Positions 1 through 50,074 of a DNA stretch of 64,000 nucleotides are shown one piece after another. The notes under the pieces are model-generated. The model worked only from the letters and a program-made list of their open reading frames with translations. It was not told the origin of the DNA and searched no databases. Source of the DNA: Anthoceros angustus (Eukaryota > Plantae > Anthocerotophyta); contig MU008150.1 of NCBI GenBank assembly GCA_010909165.1, positions 248,001 to 312,000 of the forward strand, read 5' to 3'. A program made the position numbers and the translations under genes. How positions within the stretch are numbered: position 1 is the stretch's first letter; the number at the start of each line of letters is the position of its first letter.

Positions 1-60
1 AGAATGGTGTATGTGGTGTAGCACGGGGATGGCTGGGATTGAACTTGAATGCTATTTTAG

Positions 61-1388
61 CGTTTTGCTGGATGGAAACGATGGTCTGTAGTGGGCAAGC
101 TTGGTGTCAACATGGAGGACGAGGATTCCGAGTGGAGGCGCCGGTCACCGAGGACTGAAGACCGGGAGGGGGAAGAGGAGGCGACCATTGTGCCTAATCG
201 TCCTGGATTTGGACTCGCACTGCTCGTCTTGGCAGCCTTCGCGGTCAGTATTTCTGTCATTGGATTCGCTAGGTATGCACAGTCCTGTTCCGTTGCAGTT
301 TCGGAAATTCTCATGGATACGTAAGTGGATGGGACTTCGTGCAGCTAGGAGCTCTTCGCCGGAGGCTTGCAAGGTTTAACGAAAGGGTTTATCGGCAGGT
401 AGGTGATTCTGCGTCTCTCTCCTGTATGGCTGCAGGGCAGGAGGGAGGTCAGGCAAGCAGGAAAGCAATGTTGGTAACGATGTTTCAGCCTCTGATACCA
501 TTGTGTAGAGCTACGGTTCCCCCGAACATGGCACTTCCAGGACCGTCGTATGGTGGGTTTGGAGAGATGGCCAGGGTTTTTCCTCCGGGCCTTACACCGA
601 TCCATGGAGGTTTCGACGAACACACCAGTTTTGGGACGAGTACTTCGAGGAGCAGCTAAAAAAGGTGAGCTTCTGGTTTGTTCCAGAAACGTCCAAAAGT
701 GATCTGTGAAATACTTCTCCTTTGGCAACGGAGACGATATTGTTACGTTTGTGTAAACAGGAACGTATGAGGCGAATGCAAGAGGCGTTTTACAGGGAAA
801 AGACTCGGTACACCAGAGATTTTAGATGGCAGGAGCAACCAGGCAACTGGTATTCATCACGACACTGGGACTCCAGTAATGCCCACAGGACCACAGCGGA
901 AGGTCAAAGACAACAAGCCGTCAGACAAGCGGGAGTGCAAAGACATTATGAAGTTTTAGGTCTTGATCCGTATGTTTTCTCCTGCCTCCAGTTTTGGTTG
1001 ATGGAGCCTTTTGGCATTCGCTGCCCTCAGGTGCTCACAGAGAGACATGTTTTTTGTGTCTCAGGAACTTGCAGTACTCCGAAGCAGAGCTCAAGGTACG
1101 GCGTAGCATGTGGGGTTAATTTGTCGCTTCCATTGCACCCATTCCTTCGTAACAATCGCTTTGTTGAGTTTCCAGGCTGCTTTCAGAGCAAAAGCCAAAC
1201 AACATCATCCTGACCGAAACCCCAATCGCAAAGGTAACAACTCCGCAGTTATGTCCTACCTCTTATTCGTGCTCTCCCTTGGCAGTACCGATTCATGATT
1301 GTTCTGTATCTCAGCTGAGGCCGAGGAGAAATTCAAAGCTGTTGTGGAATCATATGAGGCACTTCGTGCCCGGAGCAATCTGAAGTAG
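61..1388 (+). CDS. DnaJ/J-domain protein with an N-terminal transmembrane segment and a C-terminal J domain; multi-exon, probably 5'-partial
   Basis: Spliced exons give GFGLALLVLAAFAVSISVIGFAR (hydrophobic), then RHYEVLGLDP...SEAELK|AAFRAKAKQHHPDRNPNRK|AEAEEKFKAVVESYEALRARSNLK* with the HPD motif; TAG at 1386-1388. A ttttag acceptor at 55-60 suggests the gene starts before the window; the first in-frame ATG in the window is at 112. Confidence 0.85.
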
Positions 1389-37946: not shown

Positions 37947-39444
37947 TCAGTTCCTTGTGACCTTGGGCGTGGCTTTCCGATTGCTCTTCACTTTCACCCT
38001 GGTGACCCTGGGGGCACGCAGCTGTTCTGGAAGGAGGTCTCGCTGGGAGGACAGCTCGGCGATGAAGAGAACAGTGTGTGCCCACCCAGCATACTTGCCA
38101 AACCTTGTCACAAATGCCTGGGCAACATCATGATGTAATTTTGGTGTGAGCCGCTCCCCTGCAAGTTCTGGCATGAGATAACGCACAGCAATCTGCGTAT
38201 GACAAAACGTTCAGATGTTAGCTACACTCAGGAGGCAGTGGGAGGAAAGTGCTTAGTATGGCTCTCACCTGCCAAACATGGGTATCAACTGGAACGGCGT
38301 GATGCTGGTCAAGGGAGAAGAGAGCAATGCAGGCTGCCACTTTGGGCCCAACACCAGGCAGAGTGCATAATGCTGCGACAGCCTCAGGAAGAGATACCTT
38401 CCTTAGGGAGAGAAGCCAATCCCTGCCCCCGTCCTTCTGAAGCAGTACCTCTGCAGCTCCGACGATAAACTTTGCTCTGCAGCAAATAACGTAGGGCAAG
38501 AATGTGAGAGGGACGTGAGATGTCAAACCGTAGGTGGCCATGACTGTAGAGCATTGGTGTCACCTGTAGCCAAACCCAGCCTCACGCAGGGCAGTTTCCT
38601 TCACACTAGCCAGCTGCTCAAGGGTTGGAAATTGGTGGAACCGGAGGCCTTTGACTGTTCCCAGGTAAGTCCCCAAGCTGGCCAAATGATCCACCATGCC
38701 AGTGATCCTTTGCAGGTGATTGTTGGACGAACAGATGAACTGGAAGACGCACTCCAAGGGATCTTGCCTCAGCAGACGCGCACCTGACATGTATGGAGCA
38801 ACTGCCGCAAATCTTTCATCAGCTGCTTCAAAACCAGTCCAGAGATCCTTCAAAGACGTGTCCAGGTTCAGATAATCCTGAAGGACGGCCTCCACGTCTC
38901 CCCCAACCTTCCTTCCAGGCACCAAGACATCAAGGCAAGACAGCTCCGTCTTTGCACATGCGCTGCTGCTGCCCCAAGAAGGCTGCGCTGCAGCAGGTGG
39001 GTGCAGCAGAAACTCCACATCACGGTCAGTCTGGCGCAGGGAAACAAGGTGGGAGCCCACCACACCTGTATACTCTGCATCACCCGTCTTCCTCCACCGG
39101 AATGTTTGGCCTGTGGGAAGCGTGAGCGCCAGACACAACTCATCAACAGTGACACCCAGACTTATCCAAGTCCCCAACCTCCCCCCACCACAGGGCTCCT
39201 GCTCCCGATCCTGCACCTGCTCCAGCCGCTGCTCAAGATCAAAGGTCAGAACTCTCCTTGCCCGCTCCCCGCGCACTCGCAAGTCCTTGCCTGCAATTCC
39301 AGCGCCCCCACCAGCACCCAAAGCCCTCTTCCGCATTACCGCTGGCGGGCTCTGCTTCCCCACCCCAGTACCAGTACTAGGCCTCAGTGCACGGTCCAAG
39401 GATGTCATGCTGGGACTGGTGCAGCTTCTTGGCAACCTCCACAT
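37947..39444 (-). CDS. OGG1: 8-oxoguanine DNA glycosylase/AP lyase
   Basis: LTLPTGQTFRW, ARLLRQDPLECVFQFICSSNNHLQRITGMV, LREAGFGYR|AKFI, the HhH-GPD motif LCTLPGVGPKVAACIALFSLDQHHAVPVDTHVWQ, and FGKYAGWAHTVLFIAEL. ATG 39444; two introns. Confidence 0.96.
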
Positions 39445-39789
39445 TCAGAGCATGAGCCGACGATCCAATGCCCCAGAAAAGCAAATGCGATGCAAGCCCG
39501 CCTGACACCCGAATCCAGGCCAGCGGGACCACTGTTACAGAATTGTTTGCGCGTTTCTTGACGTGGAAGGATGCAGGGACATCGCATCTGCCGTGGCCTG
39601 TGTGGTGTACATGTACGTGTGGTTTACCCGTTTACCGTGAGGGTTGCGCGGTAAGCCCAAGCCCTGGGGGCTGCCGCCGCCGGGGCTTGGAGCAGAAGCT
39701 GGTGGGCAGAGGGTGGGAGGGAAGAAGAGCTGCCTTGCTTGCCTGCTTGCTGGGTTGTCTTGCCCTTCTCTCTGTGTTGCGAGCAGGCC

Positions 39790-39824
39790 ATGGCAAGTGG
39801 TGGGGATGCAGCAGAAGCAGGAAT

Positions 39825-39856
<32 letters not shown>

Positions 39857-40902
39857 AGGCAGCAGGGTGGCAGGAGAGCTTGATTCCGGGGCTGCCGGAG
39901 GAGGTTGCCTTCAAGTGCCTGACCCACGTCCCGCGGCGGTGCCACCGGGTGATGCGCAGGGTGTGCACACAGTGGGACAGGCTGCTGGACAGCGACGAAT
40001 TCTTCGAGGCTCGGGCGAAGGCGAAGCTGGCGGAGCCGTGGATCCACGTCCTCACGCGGATCCAGGGGAGCCGGAACCCGTGGCGGGCCTTCGACCTGCA
40101 CTCCAGGAGGTGGATCAAGTTCCCGGACCTGCCATCGTCCGTGTACGAGAAGCTCTCCCTGGTGGGGCTGCAGTGCCAGGTGGTGAAGGGAAAGCTGGTG
40201 CTGTGCGGGGGGCGATGGCAGGGCTCCATCATCAAGGACGTGCTGGTGTACGACCCCAGGGCGGACAGGTGGAGGGAGGGGGAGGGCATGCTTTCGCACC
40301 GGGCGGATTTCGTGAGCGGGGTCATCGAAGACCAGCTCTACGTCGCCGGGGGGAACAACGGGGTGCAGGGACGGACCAGGTCCGTGGAGCGCTACGACAT
40401 CGAGCAGAACCGCTGGTTCCCGGCGCCCAGCATGAACTACGACACTGCTTTCTGTCTGGGGGTCACCTTGGACGACAAGTTCTTTGTGCATGCCAAGGGC
40501 GGGCTGCCGGAGGAGACCCAGGTCTTCTGCCCCTTTAGGGGGCTCTGGAGCAGCTTCGAGGCCGAGATGCTCACCTCGCACCGGATCCATCCCTACGTTG
40601 TCAGCAATGGTCAGCTGTACAGGGCGGACATGCTGCCCACCAAGTTCGAGATCAAGGCGTATGATGTGGGGAGCGATACCTGGATCAGCATGAAGCCCAC
40701 TCTCACCATCTTCCATCCCACCAAGTATGTGAAGGAGCTGGTGGACCTGGACCAGAAGCTGGGGATTGTCATGGATGACTTCAGTGTTGCTGTTGTGGAG
40801 ATCGACCTGCCCAACCACAGCCTCAAGTACCAGTGGTTCTACTTGACTGCAGCAAATCCTTCCACCGACAGGATTGTCAGCTGCCATGTCCTGTATGCAT
40901 GA
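39790..40902 (+). CDS. F-box/kelch-repeat protein, intronless
   Basis: F-box LIPGLPEEVAFKCLTHVPRRCHRVMRRVCTQWDRLL, and kelch repeats with GG..Y..W (LVLCGG...VLVYDPRADRW; LYVAGG...VERYDIEQNRW). ATG 39790. Confidence 0.93.
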
Positions 40903-41140: not shown

Positions 41141-44100
41141 TCATGGCCGGTTGTGCCTGAACAGGATGAAGGACACAAAGGCTAAGGAAGCGAACATGAG
41201 GCTCATACCTCCTAGGGCTACAAAATCGAGACCGATCCGGGAGTAGTCGAGGGATCGGAGGTCGCTTATTCTGTCCCACACAAACTCACCGTCCAAGTCT
41301 GCAAACCGCTTGCAGGGGCAGGCTGGGCAAGGGCTGTGAGGAGGAGCAGGGCATGCCATGCATGACGGCTGCTTGGTGTCGCAGAAGAAGCTGATGGATG
41401 TTAGGGTGTTGGTGACGTACTGGTAAGGGTTCGCCCAGAAGAGCCAAGTGTAGGAATTGGGTACAAGCAGCTTGGGGACCACCACGCCTGATGCTGTTAT
41501 CCACAGTGACGAGATGATGGAAACTGCGAAGGCTGCAAGAATCGGCACCGGCGTTGCTATGGTGAGCAGCATCCCGAAGTAGGTCACAGCCAGAGTGAAC
41601 ATGAAGAGTCCCATCCAGTACTGCACGAAGTTGGCCAGAGAGTCTGTTGCGATGCCAGCCATTCCGTTGCCGATGGCCACGAACACGAGCGTGGCGATGA
41701 GGAGATAGGGCATCTCAGCCAGAGCCCAGGATATCGGGTAGAAAATGGCTGCGTACATTCTGGCCCTCCTCTCCCGGAAGTACGCCAGCCGGTCCGTGCC
41801 AATCTGGGGTATGATATTGTTGGCTGTCACCACTCCGATGAGCATGATCTGGATGTACACAAACAGGGAGCGGGATGTAACAGCGAAGCTGTCCTTCTCG
41901 CCGATCTGGAAGTAGAGAGAACCCAGCAGCAGACCGATGGATATGGAAGCCGTGAGTCGGCCGAAGGTGTACTGGACATTCCTCCATAGGAACTTCTGTG
42001 TCCGCAGAAACACCATGGCCGCCTGCTTCCAGTACGAGGCTGCATATGCGGTATCCACATCCTTGATGACATGCCTTCTGCTTTTCCTGCGTAGTTTGCC
42101 CAGCTCCTTGCTGTTGTCCTCCCCCAACCTGCTCTCTCTGTAGACTGTGGCGAAGTCATGGACGGGTGCTCTTCTCCTGATTCCAGCTCCCAGGATATCA
42201 AGCACATAGGTGATGGCGTTCTGGGAGCTGTGGTACTCAGGTACCTTTGGGATGGACGTGAAGTACCTCAGCAGCTCGGTGCAGTTCCAGCCCACAGGCC
42301 CGAAGTAGGCCTGCTCTCCCCCAGGTCCGAGGATGAGCACGCTGCTGAAGGCACTGAGCATTCTGGCACTGGGGTGCTGGATGGTGCTGATCACAGTCCG
42401 CCCCGTGGAAGCGATAGTCTGCATGGCTTGCAGGATGTTTCGAGCACCGATGCTGTCCATACCGGAGGTGGGTTCGTCCAGGAACAGGACGCTTGGGTTC
42501 GCAGCCAGCTCCACTGCAATGGTTATCTTTTTGGCTATCTCGTAGGTCCTCCCTGTTGCATCTCTGAGAGACCCCACCAGCTGGTCACTCACAGGATGGA
42601 GATCCAGTAGTTCTAGGATCAGCTCCACATGCTGCTCAAGGTAGCCCGAATAGACGCTGTTCCCCAGCCGCAGGATGGCGCTAAATCGTAGCGATTCTTT
42701 CACGGTCAGGAAGGGTTGATGGGCATCCAACTTCTCAGCGAAGCCCGAGATGCGTGAGAATGTGGCAACACTTGGCTTATACCCGTTCACCAAAATCTCG
42801 CCCAGTTGCTCACCGTGGGATGCCCTGTTTGCCAGACACTTGAGGAGGCTGGTTTTACCGGATTTGGTGCCCCCCAGTAGTGCTAGCATCGCTCCTGACT
42901 TGCAGTATCCCGAGACTTTGCTCAGAATCACTTGGCTCTGCCCCTTGGCGTCCTTGCAGGTGAATGTGAGGTCGTGGAATGAAATTGCCACAGGCGTGAC
43001 CGGGATGTGGTGGTCAGACCATCCTTTCATCCCCTCTTGATCACTGGCGCATGCCTCTTCGTCATAGCCTTCCCTCTGCTGTTTACTGAGAAAGTGCGAT
43101 CCAACATGACTGTCGCCCCCAGAAGACGAGGAGGATGGAGACTCTTCCACCTGCAAGACCATAGAAGTGGTCTTTTCTTGGGGGAGAGAGTTGTTGAGCT
43201 CGGTAAACCTTAGTCTGCTTATTGCTCGGTGTGCAAGGATTAGTATGAGAACTGTCCACCCCAGAATCACGGCGAAGGAAACCATTATCCAACCACTCCC
43301 TGTCTTCAGCTGGTAATATTTGAGATAGGCGTCGCCAGTCTGCATGTTGGGATACACCTCGCAGAATGGCAAGTCCAGGTGGAGGTGGCAGGAATCCTTG
43401 TAAGCACTACCTCCGATTTGGGTGATGCAAAAGGCCATGTTTGCCCAATGAATTGGATTGGCGTAGTACATCCACTTCCACCACTTGGGAATGTTGTGTG
43501 GGTAGATGAGAAAGCCGGAAAAGAGGAGGAATATGGAAACGAGTAATCCTGTGAGACGGTTCCCACTTGAGGTGTTAAGATTTCTACTGAATACCAACAA
43601 GCCGGAAGGGGGTTGCATCTTAGAACTGCTTGTTTGTGACCGACCAGGACACGAAAAGGAAAGTGTTCGAGGCTTACCACCCAGTGCATTTGCAGCCTCC
43701 AGGATTGGTGAGATAGCGCTCAGTAGGAAGAAGAGGCATGATCCAAAGAATGCTATTGAGCACAGAAGTCCCCAGTACACGAAGAAGTGCAGTCCATCGT
43801 CCTTTGTTGAGAGGCCTGCTCCAAAATAAACGCAGACACAGTAGAGAGTTCCCTGCCAGTCCAAGTCCAGTACAACAATTTGTTAGATGTGCCCACCTCT
43901 GAAAGGCAATATCTGGGCTTATTAGCTTGAGGATGATTTATCAGGATCCACCTCAATTATGGACTGTGGCAAGGAAATGGCACTATGAGCAACAACGTAG
44001 GAAGAAGCTCTGAAGAAGCGCTGGTCCCGTTGCTTGTAGAATATAGGCCGTTGCATCATGTAAACAGGTGCTTGTACTGAGTTGATGAGCATAATACCCA

Positions 44101-47100
44101 TTGTGGACACAAATCCGAGCCCGCGGATAGCATTCATTTCCAGGATTCCGGGTTTGCCTCCCAGCCCCTTAAAGATGGTTCCAGCAACCAAACTCAGGAT
44201 CAACACCTGCAGGTTCAGGCAAAAAGGGCATTTTTTAAAGATGCGGTTGTGGGGCGAACCAATGTATGGCACGACCTCTATCTCCTTCCTCAAGGAAAGG
44301 GAGGCTGGTGCGTAATTCTGTAAAAGAGTGCCTACCTGCAAGAGTCGGAGTTGAAAAAGGATGGTGAGTCTCTTGGTAAGTTTGAGCTGGCGCTTGATGA
44401 GCGTCAGTGTGGATGGCCACCACCGTTGGACATGCTCTTGCGAGAATTGGCCCTCCACCATCTCTTCCCCATCCTCTGCATTTGCCTGAAAGGAACAAGG
44501 GCACAGAATTTCATCATCGTTTTTCACGAGCATTCCTAGCCTCCACTTCATCCTTCAAAATATGGGCAGTACGCTTGATGAGTTTCAAGAGGAAGGAGCA
44601 GTTTGAGCAATACGTAACATCGAGCTGGAAGCAGACCTGGGTTTCAAGTGTGCGTTGCAGTTGCAGACGAACATGACCTCGTGCATTGGATAGAAGAGTG
44701 GACACCCTGGCAGCTTGGTTGGTCTGGTGGTCCTGTGACCCAAGAGCGAGGTACTGCATTCCGCCAGCTGGGCTTGAGATAGCGGTCACCACATCCCCAA
44801 CCTGAATGTTCCCTGTGCTCTCGATCCCTCGGCTGTGATCCACGTTGCCGGACAGCTTGGCCACCACCACTTCTGCAGGACGTGAAAACAAGACGATGGA
44901 GCTGAGTCGGCAGGCACATGACAGCGCTGCGCTTGGGCAGGCACCCACACAATCTTAAGCTTCACCAATGACTACATGTAGCACTCACTGGATGGCCATG
45001 GCCACACTTGTGCGACACATACCAGGGCCGAAGAACACTTTGGATGTGGAGCCATCGTCAAGATGCTCGGCCCGCTCCGCCTTGCGAACTGAGAGACCCA
45101 AGTTGGGCTCGCTCTCCACCCAGAAGGTGTGCAAAACCTCGTCGCTCGTCACGATCCGCATCACATCCCGACGGAGCTCCGAGTCTCTGTAAGCCTTGAG
45201 CAGGTCCTGGAGGTGGGGAACGGGCAGCCCGTCCTCCACGTACTGAGACCCCTCGCCCGCTGCAATCTCCTGAAGAAACTCTCCCGAATCGACATGCGCG
45301 GGCTTCACAAACCTGTGGCACCCAACAAATTGCCGATCTCGTCACTCTGCTGTACACCGAGGGGGAGGACACAACAAAGTGCTCTGGTAACTCGCTCAAT
45401 GTTGCAAGCGCAAGCTTGCAATTTCCTCACCCGAGCTCCTCGAAGTAGTGCAGCGCGTCCTGGCGCGGGCCCTGGTACAGGATCCTGCCCTCCCCGAGCA
45501 GGATGACTCGATCGAACAGGTGGAACACCTCCTGCGACGGCTGAACCAGCGACATGACTGCGGAGCACTGCTGGAACCTGCTGATGGCCCTCAGCGTGCA
45601 CACGAGGTCGTAGGTGGCCAGCGACTCCTGCCCCGAGCACGGCTGGTCGTACAGCATCACGGCGTACGTCCCCATGGCGATCTCCGCCGTGGTGAGCCGG
45701 TTCCTGTCGTTGTCCGTGATCCCAGCCCCCGGGTTGCCCACAATCTCGTTCTCGATGCCCTTCAGCCCCAGCACATGCAGAATGTACTCCAGGTATGGGT
45801 CCTGCCCCTCCACCAGCGCGTGCGCGAAGAACTTGCGCAGCTGCGGCGAGAAGTTCTTGGGCCGCAGCCCCTGGGTGCACTCCCCCGCGAACTCCAGCGT
45901 CTCCCGCACCGTCAGACCCGGCAAATGCCTGCAATCGTTCACCAGTCAGGCCGGTGGAATCCGAATTCTCGCAGTCTGCAGCAAACTGGTTGCATCCACA
46001 TGTCTCACTTGTTGAGCTGCCCGTTGATGTAGGCGATGAGGCGAGTGAGCACAACCTCCGACGCGTCCCGCCCGTTGTACTTCACCCAGCCCTCCAGCTT
46101 CACCGTCTTGCTGGTCTCCGCTCTCCCAGCAAGGACCTGCCAGACACGGCACAAGCCTCTCATCACCGACTGTGACAAGCATCCATGGACCAAACAACAT
46201 GGCGAGCTGGCCCGTAGCTGGGTGGTACCTTGAGGAGGGACGTTTTGCCGCTCCCGGGAGGACCCAGCAGCAGCGTCATGGAGCCGGGCATGATGTAGCC
46301 GTGGACGTCGTGGAGGATCTCGTAGGTGACGGCGGCCTTGGATCGGTCGCGGAGGAAGGGGTTGAGGAGGAGGCCGGCGGTGATGTTGTACACCTTCTTG
46401 CCGAAGGTCTGGAAGGCCTGGTCCTGCGGCAGCAGCTGCGCGGTGTAGCTGATGCCCCCGAAGCGGACCACCTGGCGGGGGACGGGCGGGGTGAGCCTGG
46501 CCACGTCCCGGAGGTAGTTCACGATGCCGTCCTTCATGATGAAGTCCATGCCCACCAGCATCGGCAGCTGGTCCCCGCTGCCGCCATCCACATCGTGGTG
46601 CAGGCGCTGGAACGCCTTCTCCGCCTCCGCCAGCATCCCCTTCTGCTTCAGCAGCCGGTACATGTGCAGCGCCACGTCCTGCACATTCTCCGTCGCCGCA
46701 TGCGCCAGCTTCCGCGCCACGTCCGGGGTCTGGGAGCCCTGCAGCCCCGGCAGCCTTGCCCTGGTCATGGGCGTCTCGCTTCCCCGCACCGGCACCACGA
46801 ACACCTGCTGGCAGCAGCACAAGAAGCAGACGCCTCACTCTCACATTGCAACAATGCGGGAACGAACGCGTCAACGAGAAGCAACGCCAGGCTGAAGCAG
46901 CCGAGGACGCACCTGGTCCCGGTGCGGGGTCTGGGTGGCGGGGAAGTCGAATCCGGGGGAGGGCAGGAAGGCGGACTGGCCCGGGGTCGGGGCGGACATG
47001 AGGCTGAAGCCGGAGACGAGGTGGTCCACCGACGCGGGGTCGAAGCTGTCCGTGCTCGTGTTGTTGTAGAAGCTGTAGCCGTTGGCGCTGGCGCTGGAGA

Positions 47101-47242
47101 TCCTGCTGGTTCCATCGGCCCCGTCCCCGTCTTCCAGCACCACGGCGTGCTCGCCCTGCCACCAGATGGGCCTCGCCGCCGGCTTGGACCGGAAATGCAG
47201 CGGCGAGCGCATCCAGCTGCCCCGCGGACTGGGACTGGCCAT
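41141..47242 (-). CDS. Full-size ABCG (PDR-type) transporter, NBD1-[PDZ-like]-TMD1-NBD2-TMD2, ~10 exons, roughly 1,700 aa
   Basis: NBD1: ILHDVHGYIMPGSMTLLLGPPGSGKTSLLK, LTVRETLEFA, SLVQPSQEVFHLFDRVILLGEGRILYQGPR. TMD1: QRPIFYKQRDQRFF, FSGFLIYPHNIPKWWKWMYYANP. NBD2: GKTSLL, IAVELAANPSVLFLDEPTSGMD. TMD2: DRLAYFRERRARMY. ATG 47242. Confidence 0.93.
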
Positions 47243-47750
47243 GGCCGAGGCCAAGGATTTGGAGAAATCTCGAAGCGACTGCCGTCGCTCCCGTTTCCGA
47301 CTCCGCTCCCAAGCTCCCAAGCTGCTGTTACTCTACATGCAATGGTTCTTGTCGAATTGGAATGGCGTCTTCTTGCGACTGCGGGGCTTGGAGGTGGACT
47401 CCAGCGTCTGCCATGGAGACTCGGTTCCTGGCTGCCAAGGCTTTGTAGTGGAGGGTCCAGGATCCCAGTGGAAGGGGAGGGTGGACGCGAATCTGGGCGA
47501 ACGTGGGGTCTTGAAACTCGAGCGGAGTGTGGTGCCAATGGGGAATCGGAAAGCGCCAAGGCCGGCTGCTCCACGCGGCGGCAGCCGGCTCCATGGCAGG
47601 TTGCTGCCAAGTGGCGCCTTGGTGAACTCTGGGTGGGGAGAGGGACGGCCGAGGCTACTGCTCAGACTCACAGTGGAAGGGGGAAGGGGGCGGCGTACTG
47701 TGTAGGTCACGGAGGGAAGACAGGAAGACAGCAGCCGACCCGACAGGAAA

Positions 47751-50074
47751 ATGGGGAGCCTCGCTTTTGCGCCTGGGGCAGCATCACCCGGGCCGGGCCG
47801 ATTCCGATTCCCATCCCTTCGCTCCCGCCCCTGTCGGGCCTGGCGGCTGTGCCGTGTGGGTGCCACCACGGCGCGGGCTGCCACGTCGGCGGAGCCCTTG
47901 GTGCATCTCCTGCGGCACAATCACAATGCGGCCGCCTCCGGGGGATGCTCTCCGGAGGATGCCCTGCGCCGGGGCCGCTGGGTGAAGCTCATTTGTGGGG
48001 CGAGCTTTGAGGTAGGAAGGAGGGTGGATTGCTTTGCTTTCCTTCGCGTTGGAGGGTTGAGCATTGAGAATTTAGTTGGTGGAGCAGGATTTGGCACGAG
48101 TGCGGAATTTGGCTCTGGTCTACACGCTTGCCGGAGGTTAGTTTCCCGTGATGCAAGCGAGGTGCGAAAGGACAGGGCGCCCTGGAGCAGGGTGGCTGAT
48201 GATGGGGTGGTGTGGTGTGGTGTGGTGTGGTGGGCAGTGGACTGCATCGACTGTGCTGCCGACCCTGCTGTGGTGGGTGCTGTGGTGGAGGGTGTGGAGA
48301 CGGCAACCCATTTGGCATCGGCTTGTGCTGCTGTGGAGTGGCTCAAGCCCTGGCTCATGGTGAGCATCAACGATGACCGAGACCCCCATTTTCGGAAAGC
48401 CGGTGAGTCTGTCTTGCATTATGTCCCAGCCCAACCATGTACGACATGTGCTCACTCACAGCTTTTCGCACTGGTGCTGCAGAATTCGATGCCGACCAAT
48501 GTCCTGCCGACTGCCCCCGTCCTTGCGAGCGGGTGTGTCCTGCGTCCGCTATAACCTTCGGCCAGCATAGGGTTCGTGCTCCTGCTACTGCTTCTGCGTC
48601 TTTTCGCAATTCCTTGCTTCTCTTGCACATTACATGACATGACCCTTGGGACTGTGGCGGGACACAGGAAGGTGTCACCACCGAGAGATGCTATGGGTGC
48701 GGAAGGTGCCTGCCAGTTTGCCCCTTGGCCTTGATCCGTAAGTATGTCCATGCCCTATGTCAGCTCTCGAGTCGATAGTGGCCGCAGCCTACTGCAATGA
48801 GGATAACCCTCAAGCACGGAATTTCCAGGAGCAAATACCTACATTAGAGGATTGGACACGGTCCTTGAGCTTCTGAGCAGCAAACATGTCGACGCTGTTG
48901 AGATTCACACAGGAGCAGGGTAGCTTTTCGTCCCACCAGTAGCTTTGCTTTCCAGGATGTTTGCTCAACTAGCTCTCCTGCACAACTCACCATATCAGTT
49001 TGTCTCTGTTGTAGCCATTTGGAAGCTTTTGAAAAGCTGTGGACCAGTTTGGCAGGGGCTGTGCAACAACTGAAGCTCGTGGCTGTGAGTGCTCATTGTC
49101 TTCTCGCTTTCTCGTTCGGCTATGTACACCCTCCCCTTTTTCAGATCACACAAATGAATTGCGTGCCTGCCATTGTCTTGCTTGCAGGTGAGTGTACCTG
49201 ACCTACGCGAGTCCATGGTTCCGAGCTTGGCAGCAATGTATACGATCATGCAACCCTCTTTGAGAAGCTTGAATTTGTGGCAGGTCCCCTTCCCTTCATT
49301 TCGGCAGCTAGTATCCAGCGGCCTCGCTTGCTGCTTCTTGCACTAATCACATTACTGTGTCTTACTGTAGCTGGATGGACGGCCTATGAGCGGAGACATA
49401 GGTGCAGGTGCCACACGGGCTGCAGTGGCACTTGCTTCTCGTGTGGCTTCCTCGTTAGATCGACCTCCTGGTAAACAACTTTCTTACTTGCGTTGAACAG
49501 AGAGTGAACTGTTTGCGACTCAACTGGCGGGACCTCGCTTCTTTCTTCAGGCTTTCTTCAGCTCGCTGGTGGAACCAATGCTTACACACTGGAAGCCTTG
49601 AGGAACGCTGGTTTCTACACGGATAGTAAGGCACACTGACTGCCTGTGGACAAGTGATTTCTTTAGCGAACGTCACAGTGGGGAACCACGTATTTCTAAA
49701 ACCAACTCACACGAGGTCTTGCTGCTGCAGTCACAGGTGTGTCTGGAAGGGAAGTAGCCATAGCTGGTGTAGCTTATGGCGGGTATGCCCGGAAGGTACG
49801 GTTTCTTTACAGTCAAAATGTACCTCCTTGCCCCTACTGGGTACCTAGGATCTTATGCACTACTGGTATTGCTGCCCTGTAGATTGTGAGTAAATATCTT
49901 GCCGAGATGGAGAAGAGTGAGCAAAACGAGCAAGACACAAAGAAGCTCATGCCTCATCTCCGGTTGGAAGGTCATCCAACCCTTCTCTTCGAAGCGGTGA
50001 AGCAAGCCAGTGCCTTAGTGCAACCTAGCAAGTCTGGAACAGTAACTACAGTCTGTGAAATGGCTAGAATTTGA
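47751..50074 (+). CDS. ldpA: LdpA-like iron-sulfur (2x[4Fe-4S]) protein with probable plastid transit peptide
   Basis: WVKLICGASFE, DCIDCAAD, PWLMVSINDDRDPHFRKAEF, CPADCPRPCERVCP, RCYGCGRCLPVCP and a C-terminal GVAYGGYARK|IV...LEGHPTLLFEAVKQASALV. These match cyanobacterial LdpA as I recall it. The N-terminus is rich in Ser, Arg and Ala. Confidence 0.85.

What the first reader, a model, noticed from the sequence alone, without database searches (positions are those of the whole stretch)
44637..45134. PDZ-like domain inserted between NBD1 and TMD1 of a full-size ABCG/PDR transporter
Splicing the strong phase-1 donor (CCT G|gtatgt, 45022) to the acceptor at 44873 gives LHTFWVESEPNLGLSVRKAERAEHLDDGSTSKVFFGPEVVVAKLSGNVDHSRGIESTGNIQVGDVVTAISSPAGGMQYLALGSQDHQTNQAARVSTLLSNARGHVRLQLQR. 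This follows the PDZ pattern in order: a GLGF-like carboxylate loop (NLGL), beta-C (EVVVAKL), an alpha-A/G segment, the hallmark G-x-I-Q-V-G-D-x-V/I-x-A-I strand, an alpha-B helix (VSTLLSNA) and beta-F (VRLQLQR). It occupies the linker where plant PDRs normally have only a short spacer. ABC transporters such as CFTR and MRPs are known PDZ ligands, but I know of no ABCG that carries its own PDZ domain, and PDZ domains are scarce in plants. The domain could let the transporter bind C-terminal peptides of partners, acting as a scaffold or regulated channel.
Basis: partly seen in the sequence, partly recalled or inferred. Interest (0 to 1): 0.9.

Follow-up and report, generated by a model that had tools for sequence, protein, structure and literature searches.

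The report
PDZ-fold domain inside plant ABCG transporter
A plant multidrug-type (ABCG/PDR) membrane transporter gene carries, between its first ATP-binding domain and its first membrane domain, a transcribed and conserved ~110-residue module predicted to have the PDZ protein-docking fold, and this built-in module is shared by an old clade of such proteins from streptophyte algae to flowering plants without being annotated or, as far as I could find, described.

Summary
On the minus strand, exon 45023-45311 joins exon 44637-44872 (phase 1). A 903-nt, 100%-identical spliced RNA contig carries both joints, and relatives' transcripts carry the first. The reading frame stays open from NBD1 through the insert into TMD1.

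The insert is not peculiar to this genome. It aligns (E down to 1e-29) with the same position in PDR-like proteins of Spirogloea, Marchantia, Riccia, Selaginella, Adiantum, Cryptomeria, magnoliids, monocots and eudicots. It is absent from oomycete, Capsaspora and amoebozoan full-size ABCGs.

A scan of 1.84 billion proteins found it only in this ABCG context.

By sequence, PDZ is only hinted at: Pfam PF00595 hits 8 of 40 members, best E 0.0048, below threshold.

By predicted structure the PDZ fold is clear. Two AlphaFold models (pLDDT 67-69) returned only PDZ domains in the lists shown from five of six structure searches (one non-PDZ-named row in the sixth), with Z up to 8.9.

Ligand and function are untested. 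I found no paper describing it. The scan noted a second copy elsewhere in this genome (s1-300163).

The parts
41141..46825 (-). Full-size ABCG/PDR-like gene (NBD1, PDZ-like insert, TMD1, NBD2, TMD2). The 5' end was not mapped beyond 46825.
   Evidence: tblastn of P0001 (residues 1-1573) and P0005 is collinear from 46825 down to 41138. Pfam finds ABC_tran and ABC2_membrane twice in the homologues. The 907-aa ORF 41141-43864 hits PDR proteins at E 0.
45430..45927 (-). NBD1 exon carrying a degenerate signature (GITDNDRNR) and a Walker B with Q in place of the catalytic E (LYDQ)
   Evidence: Translation and MAFFT alignment. RNA joints at 45927/46008 and 45310/45429.
45023..45311 (-). Exon A: the post-NBD1 helical segment, then the N-terminal part of the domain from about 45140 (strand A, N-L-G-L loop, strand B, start of the variable B-C loop)
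   Evidence: RNA contig X1 record 2 covers 45023-45283. Model strands E4-10 and E15-20.
44873..45022 (-). Intron, 150 nt, GT..AG, phase 1, inside the B-C loop of the domain
   Evidence: Joint 44872/45023 in X1, and the equivalent joint in X4 and X6.
44637..44872 (-). Exon B: strand C, helix-A region, GD..VTAI strand D, strand E, long helix B, RLQLQR strand F
   Evidence: Translation. Model elements E38-44, E65-71, H84-100 and E105-112. The same exon is recovered as stand-alone ORF fragments from many plant contigs, starting at profile positions 36-45.
44486..44636 (-). Intron, 151 nt, phase 0
   Evidence: Joint 44484/5 to 44636/7 in X1.
44336..44485 (-). Exon C: acidic linker and the start of TMD1 (RWWPSTLTLIKRQLKL...)

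Best explanation
The segment is a genuine, expressed protein domain of about 110 residues with a canonical-order (not circularly permuted) PDZ-like fold. It is inserted in the connector between NBD1 and the first membrane domain of a full-size ABCG (PDR-like) protein. It is the hallmark of an old streptophyte clade of such proteins, found in Zygnematophyceae, liverworts, lycophytes, ferns, gymnosperms and angiosperms. These points are shown: the splicing, the conservation, the confinement to this ABCG context, and the predicted fold. The following is inferred. The domain would sit on the cytosolic face beside NBD1 and just under the membrane. It most likely serves as a built-in docking module that takes up a short strand of a partner protein, or of the transporter's own linker, in the groove between strand B and helix B. 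In that way it would couple partner binding, localisation or regulation to the ABC engine. In this gene and in the lycophyte and seed-plant members aligned, both composite ATP sites carry non-canonical motifs, so regulation or scaffolding is as plausible as high-turnover pumping.
For: Splice joints in RNA contigs and an open frame across them. Homology at the same position in 28 plant ABCGs and an alignment gap in non-plant full-size ABCGs. Only 27 representative clusters out of 1.84 billion proteins match, all of them ABCG proteins or exon fragments. Two independent AlphaFold models share one topology. Foldseek against PDB: the top 50 are all PDZ, probability 0.91-1.00. AFDB Swiss-Prot: the top 30 are all PDZ proteins. 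VIA-align: Z 8-8.9, rmsd 2.4-3.0 A over 82-90 of about 90-95 PDZ residues. The Foldseek-independent scan of 48,161 chains: the top 50 are all PDZ, Z 6.7-8.5. The ESM Atlas shape search and AFDB clusters are dominated by PDZ. PDZ is the only recurrent Pfam family among members. A hydrophobic-G-hydrophobic loop (LGL or IGL) is conserved at the GLGF position in most members. Substitutions within the genus are mostly synonymous.
Against: No Pfam PDZ model reaches its threshold (best E 0.0048), and the family profile finds no solved PDZ sequence significantly (E 1.2). Model confidence is moderate (pLDDT 67-69, helix A region below 50). Foldseek E-values are only about 1e-2. The residues before the loop are acidic (E-S-E-P) where classical PDZ domains have a basic residue, and the loop has diverged in Selaginella P0029 and fragment P0145. 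The invariant residues (GD, T, Y, LQ.ER) lie in core strands and not in the groove. No ligand is known. The clade's own C-terminus is short with a variable last residue, so it is not an obvious ligand.
Confidence: 0.72

Rival explanations
1. The fold is PDZ-like but the domain has no external ligand. It would be an intramolecular structural or regulatory element that packs on NBD1 or on the linker, for instance stabilising an NBD pair whose catalytic motifs have decayed.
For: The invariant positions are core residues and not groove residues. Acidic residues replace the usual basic residue before the loop. The ATP-site motifs are degenerate in this gene and in the lycophyte and seed-plant members aligned. 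No conserved C-terminal ligand motif exists in the clade itself.
Against: The LGL loop and the long helix B are retained from liverworts to angiosperms. Riccia members keep canonical ATP motifs and still have the domain, so the domain predates the decay.
Confidence: 0.2
2. It is not a PDZ fold at all. It would be another small beta-rich insertion that AlphaFold forces into a PDZ-like shape from a shallow alignment.
For: pLDDT is only 67-69 with 23-40 sequences. Sequence-level PDZ evidence is sub-threshold. The tool notes say that a best Z of 7-8 is common for unrelated models.
Against: Two models with different lead sequences agree. The lists shown from five of six structure searches hold only PDZ domains or PDZ-containing proteins, down to rank 50 at Z 6.7, where unrelated models typically have 4-5 (one search likewise). 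The AFDB-clusters list has one row named for another domain, though there too the aligned stretch may be a PDZ. Weak Pfam hits and language-model neighbours point to the same clan.
Confidence: 0.06
3. It is a gene-model artefact: a retained intron or a pseudo-exon read in a fortuitous frame.
For: One related-species contig (X2 record 6) runs unspliced through the intron.
Against: Spliced contigs in three runs carry the exon in frame. The exon is conserved across land plants at the protein level. Changes are mostly synonymous.
Confidence: 0.02

Closest known systems
Canonical eukaryotic PDZ domains (e.g. MPDZ PDZ3 2iwn, GRASP/tamalin 2pnt, ZO-1 PDZ1 4oep, Scribble PDZ1)
   Same: Same order of six strands and two helices, a hydrophobic-G-hydrophobic loop after strand A, a GD turn before strand D, and a long helix B. 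Z 8-8.9 and rmsd 2.4-3 A over nearly the whole PDZ.
   Different: Sequence identity is only 11-22% and no Pfam threshold is reached. Acidic residues replace the basic residue before the loop. The B-C loop is long, disordered and interrupted by an intron. The domain is embedded inside a membrane transporter, not in a soluble scaffold.
Plant PDZ proteins MET1 (Q94BS2) and LSF1 (8j5d chain D)
   Same: Plant proteins with a non-protease PDZ fold that appear among the structural matches.
   Different: They are soluble chloroplast proteins combined with TPR or phosphatase/CBM domains, with no detectable sequence relation to this domain.
Canonical full-size ABCG/PDR transporters (plant PDR clusters, yeast Pdr5, oomycete ABCGs)
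   Same: Same NBD-TMD-NBD-TMD order and the same Pfam families.
   Different: They have no domain at this place (gap of about 110 columns). This clade also has a changed NBD1 signature and Walker B in this gene and in the lycophyte and seed-plant members aligned.
ABC transporters regulated by PDZ scaffolds in trans (CFTR or MRP with NHERF-type proteins; established knowledge, with NHERF PDZ1 among the fold matches)
   Same: A PDZ module coupled to an ABC protein.
   Different: In those systems the transporter's C-terminus is the ligand and the PDZ is on a separate protein. Here the PDZ-like module is part of the transporter and its ligand is unknown.
'V1-type' early-diverged full-size ABCGs of Viridiplantae (PMC8359288)
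   Same: An early-branching full-size ABCG type reported in charophytes, mosses, Selaginella and Amborella, which may be this clade.
   Different: The paper mentions no extra domain and says the type is missing from other angiosperms, whereas the PDZ-bearing clade is present in many of them. Whether the two are the same clade was not tested, because no supplement was held.

Membership tests
PDZ domain (Pfam PF00595 / PDZ clan) | Sequence match to a PDZ profile at the curated threshold | tested here: not met
   The exon alone gives no hit. Among members, PF00595 hits 6/25 and 8/40 with best E 0.0074 and 0.0048, PDZ_6 and PDZ_2 are weaker, and none reaches the gathering score. The family profile against PDB sequences gives MPDZ at E 1.2.
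PDZ domain (Pfam PF00595 / PDZ clan) | PDZ fold: strands A-B-C, helix A, strands D-E, helix B, strand F, in canonical order | tested here: met
   Tested on two predicted models of homologues. The top hits are all PDZ in PDB, AFDB Swiss-Prot and the wide VIA scan, with alignments running 1..116 against whole PDZ chains. Helix A is poorly modelled (pLDDT below 50).
PDZ domain (Pfam PF00595 / PDZ clan) | Carboxylate-binding loop (basic residue, then x-hydrophobic-G-hydrophobic) between strands A and B | tested here: inconclusive
   The window has N-L-G-L, seed plants G-L-G-L and Riccia P-L-G-L. The loop has diverged in Selaginella P0029 and fragment P0145. The preceding residues are acidic (E-S-E-P), not basic.
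PDZ domain (Pfam PF00595 / PDZ clan) | Binds a peptide strand in the strand B / helix B groove | not testable with these tools
   No binding data. The clade's own C-terminus is not conserved at the last residue.
Full-size ABCG / PDR transporter | Reverse order NBD-TMD, duplicated, with ABC_tran and ABC2_membrane domains | tested here: met
   Collinear tblastn with P0001 and P0005. Pfam on the homologues and on window ORFs.
Full-size ABCG / PDR transporter | At least one canonical composite ATP site (Walker A/B and H-loop of one NBD plus the signature of the other) | tested here: inconclusive
   The NBD2 Walker A (GGTKSGKT) and Walker B (LFLDEP) are intact, but the partner NBD1 signature reads GITDNDRNR and the H-loop reads IQHPS. 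The NBD1 Walker B has Q for E, and the NBD2 signature is degenerate. Activity cannot be judged from sequence.

The most novel reading that the evidence does not exclude
An ancient streptophyte clade of ABCG proteins fused a PDZ adaptor in cis. In the lycophyte and seed-plant members aligned it then let both ATP sites decay. On this reading these proteins are no longer pumps but membrane-anchored, nucleotide-sensing scaffolds or receptors that recruit a signalling or trafficking partner through the PDZ groove. That would be a previously unrecognised functional class of plant ABC protein.
Probability: 0.2. Interest if true: 0.85.

Novelty: new variant of a known kind. Interest (0 to 1): 0.66.

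Why it matters
Plant PDR/ABCG transporters are central to defence, hormone and cuticle transport. Their domain plan is taken to be fixed, and PDZ modules are rare in plants and typically found as accessory domains of proteases or in soluble plastid proteins. A conserved, unannotated PDZ-fold module built into one ABCG clade gives a concrete handle on how these proteins might be regulated or positioned. The clade is lacking among the hits from Arabidopsis but present in crops (Setaria, cassava, tea, eucalypt) and in the tractable liverwort Marchantia. It also flags a clade whose ATP sites look unusual. The idea is directly testable by deleting or mutating the domain in Marchantia and by peptide or partner screens.

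Tried and rejected
- Pfam on the window exons alone gave nothing.
- The family profile against all PDB sequences gave nothing significant.
- Self-binding of the protein's own C-terminus was considered and set aside. The clade ends in KHN plus a 2-10 residue tail, usually 5, whose last residue varies.
- Exon skipping or another reading frame was rejected by the spliced RNA contigs.
- I looked for the domain outside ABCG proteins. Among 1.84 billion representatives, all 27 matches at E 0.001 or better were ABCG proteins or exon-sized fragments of them.
- A profile-profile comparison with a PDZ alignment could not be run, because no canonical PDZ sequences were available by reference.
- The spliced window protein itself could not be folded because it has no single reference, so homologues 58-59% identical over the second domain exon (exon B) were used.
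- Literature searches combining PDZ with ABCG, PDR, full-size, Arabidopsis or land plants found nothing relevant.
- Linking the clade to the 'V1-type' of PMC8359288 failed because no supplement was held.
- The two region-restricted protein searches returned few candidates because of the word filter. The taxon list is therefore a minimum.
- My first script placed the third exon at 44480 and got a frameshift. This was corrected to 44485 from the RNA joint.

Full report
**What is in the sequence.**
The region lies inside a minus-strand gene. Its ORFs and exons are collinear with full-size ABCG/PDR proteins: Cryptomeria P0001 residues 1-1573 and Tasmannia P0005, mapped by tblastn from 46825 down to 41138. 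The 907-aa ORF 41141-43864 hits PDR proteins at E 0.

Reading the minus strand shows exon A ending in CCT G followed by gtatgt, so the last exon base is 45023. A polypyrimidine tract and an ag follow at 44874-44873. Exon B runs 44872-44637 and ends CAG|gt. An acceptor ttcag then places the next exon start at 44485.

With the preceding NBD1 exon (45430-45927) and exon C (44336-44485), the frame is open for 391 codons.

**Transcript evidence.**
I laid contigs from four RNA-labelled runs on 43700-46300.

- Run X1 is from the same organism. Its record 2 (903 nt, no mismatch) joins 45283-45023 | 44872-44636 | 44484-44334 | 44204-43951, with GT..AG ends on the minus strand.
- Runs X4 and X6, from related species at about 95% identity, show the same first joint.
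- One contig of X2 runs unspliced through the introns, so it is pre-mRNA or DNA in that library.

The only correction is the third exon start, 44485 and not about 44482. Within exon B, five of the six differences from the relatives are synonymous and one is L to V.

**The insert is conserved and defines a clade.**
phmmer with the spliced 116-residue segment against the proteins fetched gave E 1e-29 to 4e-7 at the equivalent position. The hits are 28 plant ABCGs, including Tasmannia, Psidium, Cryptomeria, Tetracentron, Camellia, grasses, Selaginella and Riccia.

A family profile also detects the Zygnematophyceae protein from Spirogloea, P0045, at E 6e-13 in the local set. Region-restricted searches added Magnolia, Asimina, the fern Adiantum and Marchantia polymorpha.

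In a MAFFT alignment of N-terminal halves, all these proteins carry about 110 extra columns. The insert lies between the segment that follows NBD1 and the basic amphipathic stretch that opens TMD1. Pythium, another stramenopile, Capsaspora and Stygamoeba full-size ABCGs have a gap there.

Pfam leaves exactly this stretch unannotated in the homologues. In P0001 it falls between ABC2_membrane_7 at 353-409 and ABC2_membrane from 585.

An exhaustive HMMER scan of 1.84 billion representative proteins with the domain profile found only 27 clusters at E 0.001 or better. All are long ABCG proteins or exon-sized fragments, several of which carry the end of NBD1 upstream. Many fragments start at profile positions 36-45. 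This matches the exon B boundary and suggests a conserved intron position.

Invariant residues across 40 sequences are the GD pair, a T three residues later, a Y in the next strand, and L-Q-x-E-R in the last strand.

**Is it a PDZ domain?**
By sequence there is only a hint.
- The window exons alone hit nothing in Pfam.
- Scanned one by one, 6 of 25 and then 8 of 40 family members touch PF00595 (best E 0.0074 and 0.0048), and a few touch PDZ_6 and PDZ_2. No other family recurs, and none reaches its threshold.
- The family profile finds no solved PDZ sequence significantly.
- Language-model neighbours with a name are PDZ-clan clusters, but at scores that count only as a lead.

By predicted structure the answer is clear. 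I made two AlphaFold2 models with different lead sequences:
- Tasmannia P0005:500-615 with 23 sequences, pLDDT 69, pTM 0.61.
- Cryptomeria P0001:447-562 with 40 sequences, pLDDT 66.6, pTM 0.59.

Both give the same order of elements: strands at 4-10, 15-20 and 38-44, a poorly modelled stretch at 49-55, strands at 65-71 and 77-78, a helix at 84-100, and a strand at 105-112.

| Search | Result |
|---|---|
| Foldseek vs PDB | Top 50 all PDZ, probability 0.91-1.00, TM by target up to 0.60 |
| AFDB Swiss-Prot | Top 30 all PDZ proteins, including Arabidopsis MET1 |
| VIA-align on Foldseek's matches | Z 8.0-8.9, rmsd 2.4-3.0 A over 82-90 residues of 90-105-residue PDZ chains |
| Foldseek-independent scan, 48,161 chains, second model | Top 50 all PDZ, Z 8.5 down to 6.7 |
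| ESM Atlas shape search and AFDB clusters | Dominated by PDZ, including plant MET1-like and LSF1-like clusters |

For the wide scan, the tool's notes give 4-5 as the typical Z at rank 50 for unrelated models. The alignments run from the first to the last residue in sequence order. The topology is therefore the canonical one, not the circular permutation typical of bacterial PDZ domains such as those of HtrA-type proteases.

**What speaks for caution.**
- The models are of medium confidence and are of homologues, because the spliced window protein has no single reference.
- The residues before the loop are acidic where classical PDZ domains have a basic residue.
- The loop has diverged in one Selaginella paralogue.
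- The strictly invariant residues are core residues and not groove residues.
- The clade's own C-terminus (KHN plus a 2-10 residue tail, usually 5) varies at the last position, so it is not an evident ligand.

**Context that bears on function.**
In this gene and in the lycophyte and seed-plant members aligned:
- The NBD1 signature is degenerate (GITDNDRNR here).
- The NBD1 Walker B has Q for the catalytic E.
- The NBD2 signature is degenerate.
- The NBD2 H-loop reads IQHPS.

The Riccia proteins keep the canonical VSGGE signature, LLDE Walker B and IHQPS H-loop, yet already carry the insert.

**Most likely mechanism.**
The domain hangs from the NBD1-TMD1 connector on the cytosolic face. That position is inferred from the known ABCG architecture. 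I take it to be a built-in docking module that binds a strand of a partner, or of the protein's own linker, and thereby regulates or positions the protein.

I put the PDZ-like fold at about 0.9, and the whole statement including a docking role at about 0.7. Rivals are a purely intramolecular structural role (0.2), a wrong fold call (0.06) and a gene-model artefact (0.02).

**Novelty.**
Five full-text searches found no paper linking a PDZ domain with a plant ABCG or PDR protein (one search found the phylogeny paper). That paper (PMC8359288) describes an early-diverged 'V1-type' of full-size ABCGs that may overlap this clade, but it mentions no extra domain.

The proteins are in public databases under automatic PDR/ABCG names without a PDZ annotation in Pfam. 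Other resources (Gene3D, PROSITE) could not be checked. I class the finding as a new variant of a known kind. The scan has also noted a second such gene elsewhere in this genome (s1-300163).

Noticed in passing
window 45430-45927 (NBD1) and about 42300-42900 (NBD2), minus strand: ATP-site motifs are non-canonical. The NBD1 signature reads GITDNDRNR, the NBD1 Walker B reads LYDQ (Q for E), the NBD2 signature reads GRTYEIAKK and the NBD2 H-loop reads IQHPS. The NBD2 Walker A and B are intact. The lycophyte and seed-plant clade members aligned share this, whereas the Riccia members are canonical.
   Followed up: partly
window 38560-39444 (-) and 39739-40902 (+): Neighbouring ORFs encode an 8-oxoguanine DNA glycosylase N-terminal domain (OGG_N, E 1.6e-25) and an intronless F-box/Kelch-repeat protein.
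   Followed up: partly
P0143 (NCBI KAJ7300328, filed under the lizard Phrynocephalus forsythii): A 220-aa protein carries the end of a plant-type ABCG NBD1 followed by the PDZ-like exon. It most likely comes from plant or algal DNA contaminating that animal assembly.
   Followed up: no
window 44643-46300, run X2 record 6: A 3,556-nt contig from an RNA-labelled run of a related species runs through the first domain intron unspliced and has divergent sequence of similar length at the three upstream introns (71 for 76, 67 for 56, 76 for 81 letters), so that library holds pre-mRNA or genomic DNA.
   Followed up: no
window 46800-48000: A very G+C-rich stretch upstream of the mapped gene start has long overlapping ORFs on both strands (up to 612 aa), rich in Gly, Ala, Arg and Pro. 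This looks like compositional ORFs and not genes. The true 5' end of the ABCG gene was not determined.
   Followed up: no
L001 (Logan contig SRR23617307_564250), 732-2830: An unidentified organism's 3.6-kb contig carries a divergent copy of the NBD1-end plus PDZ-like segment, followed by an ABC2_membrane ORF. It is a further and more distant member of the clade.
   Followed up: no
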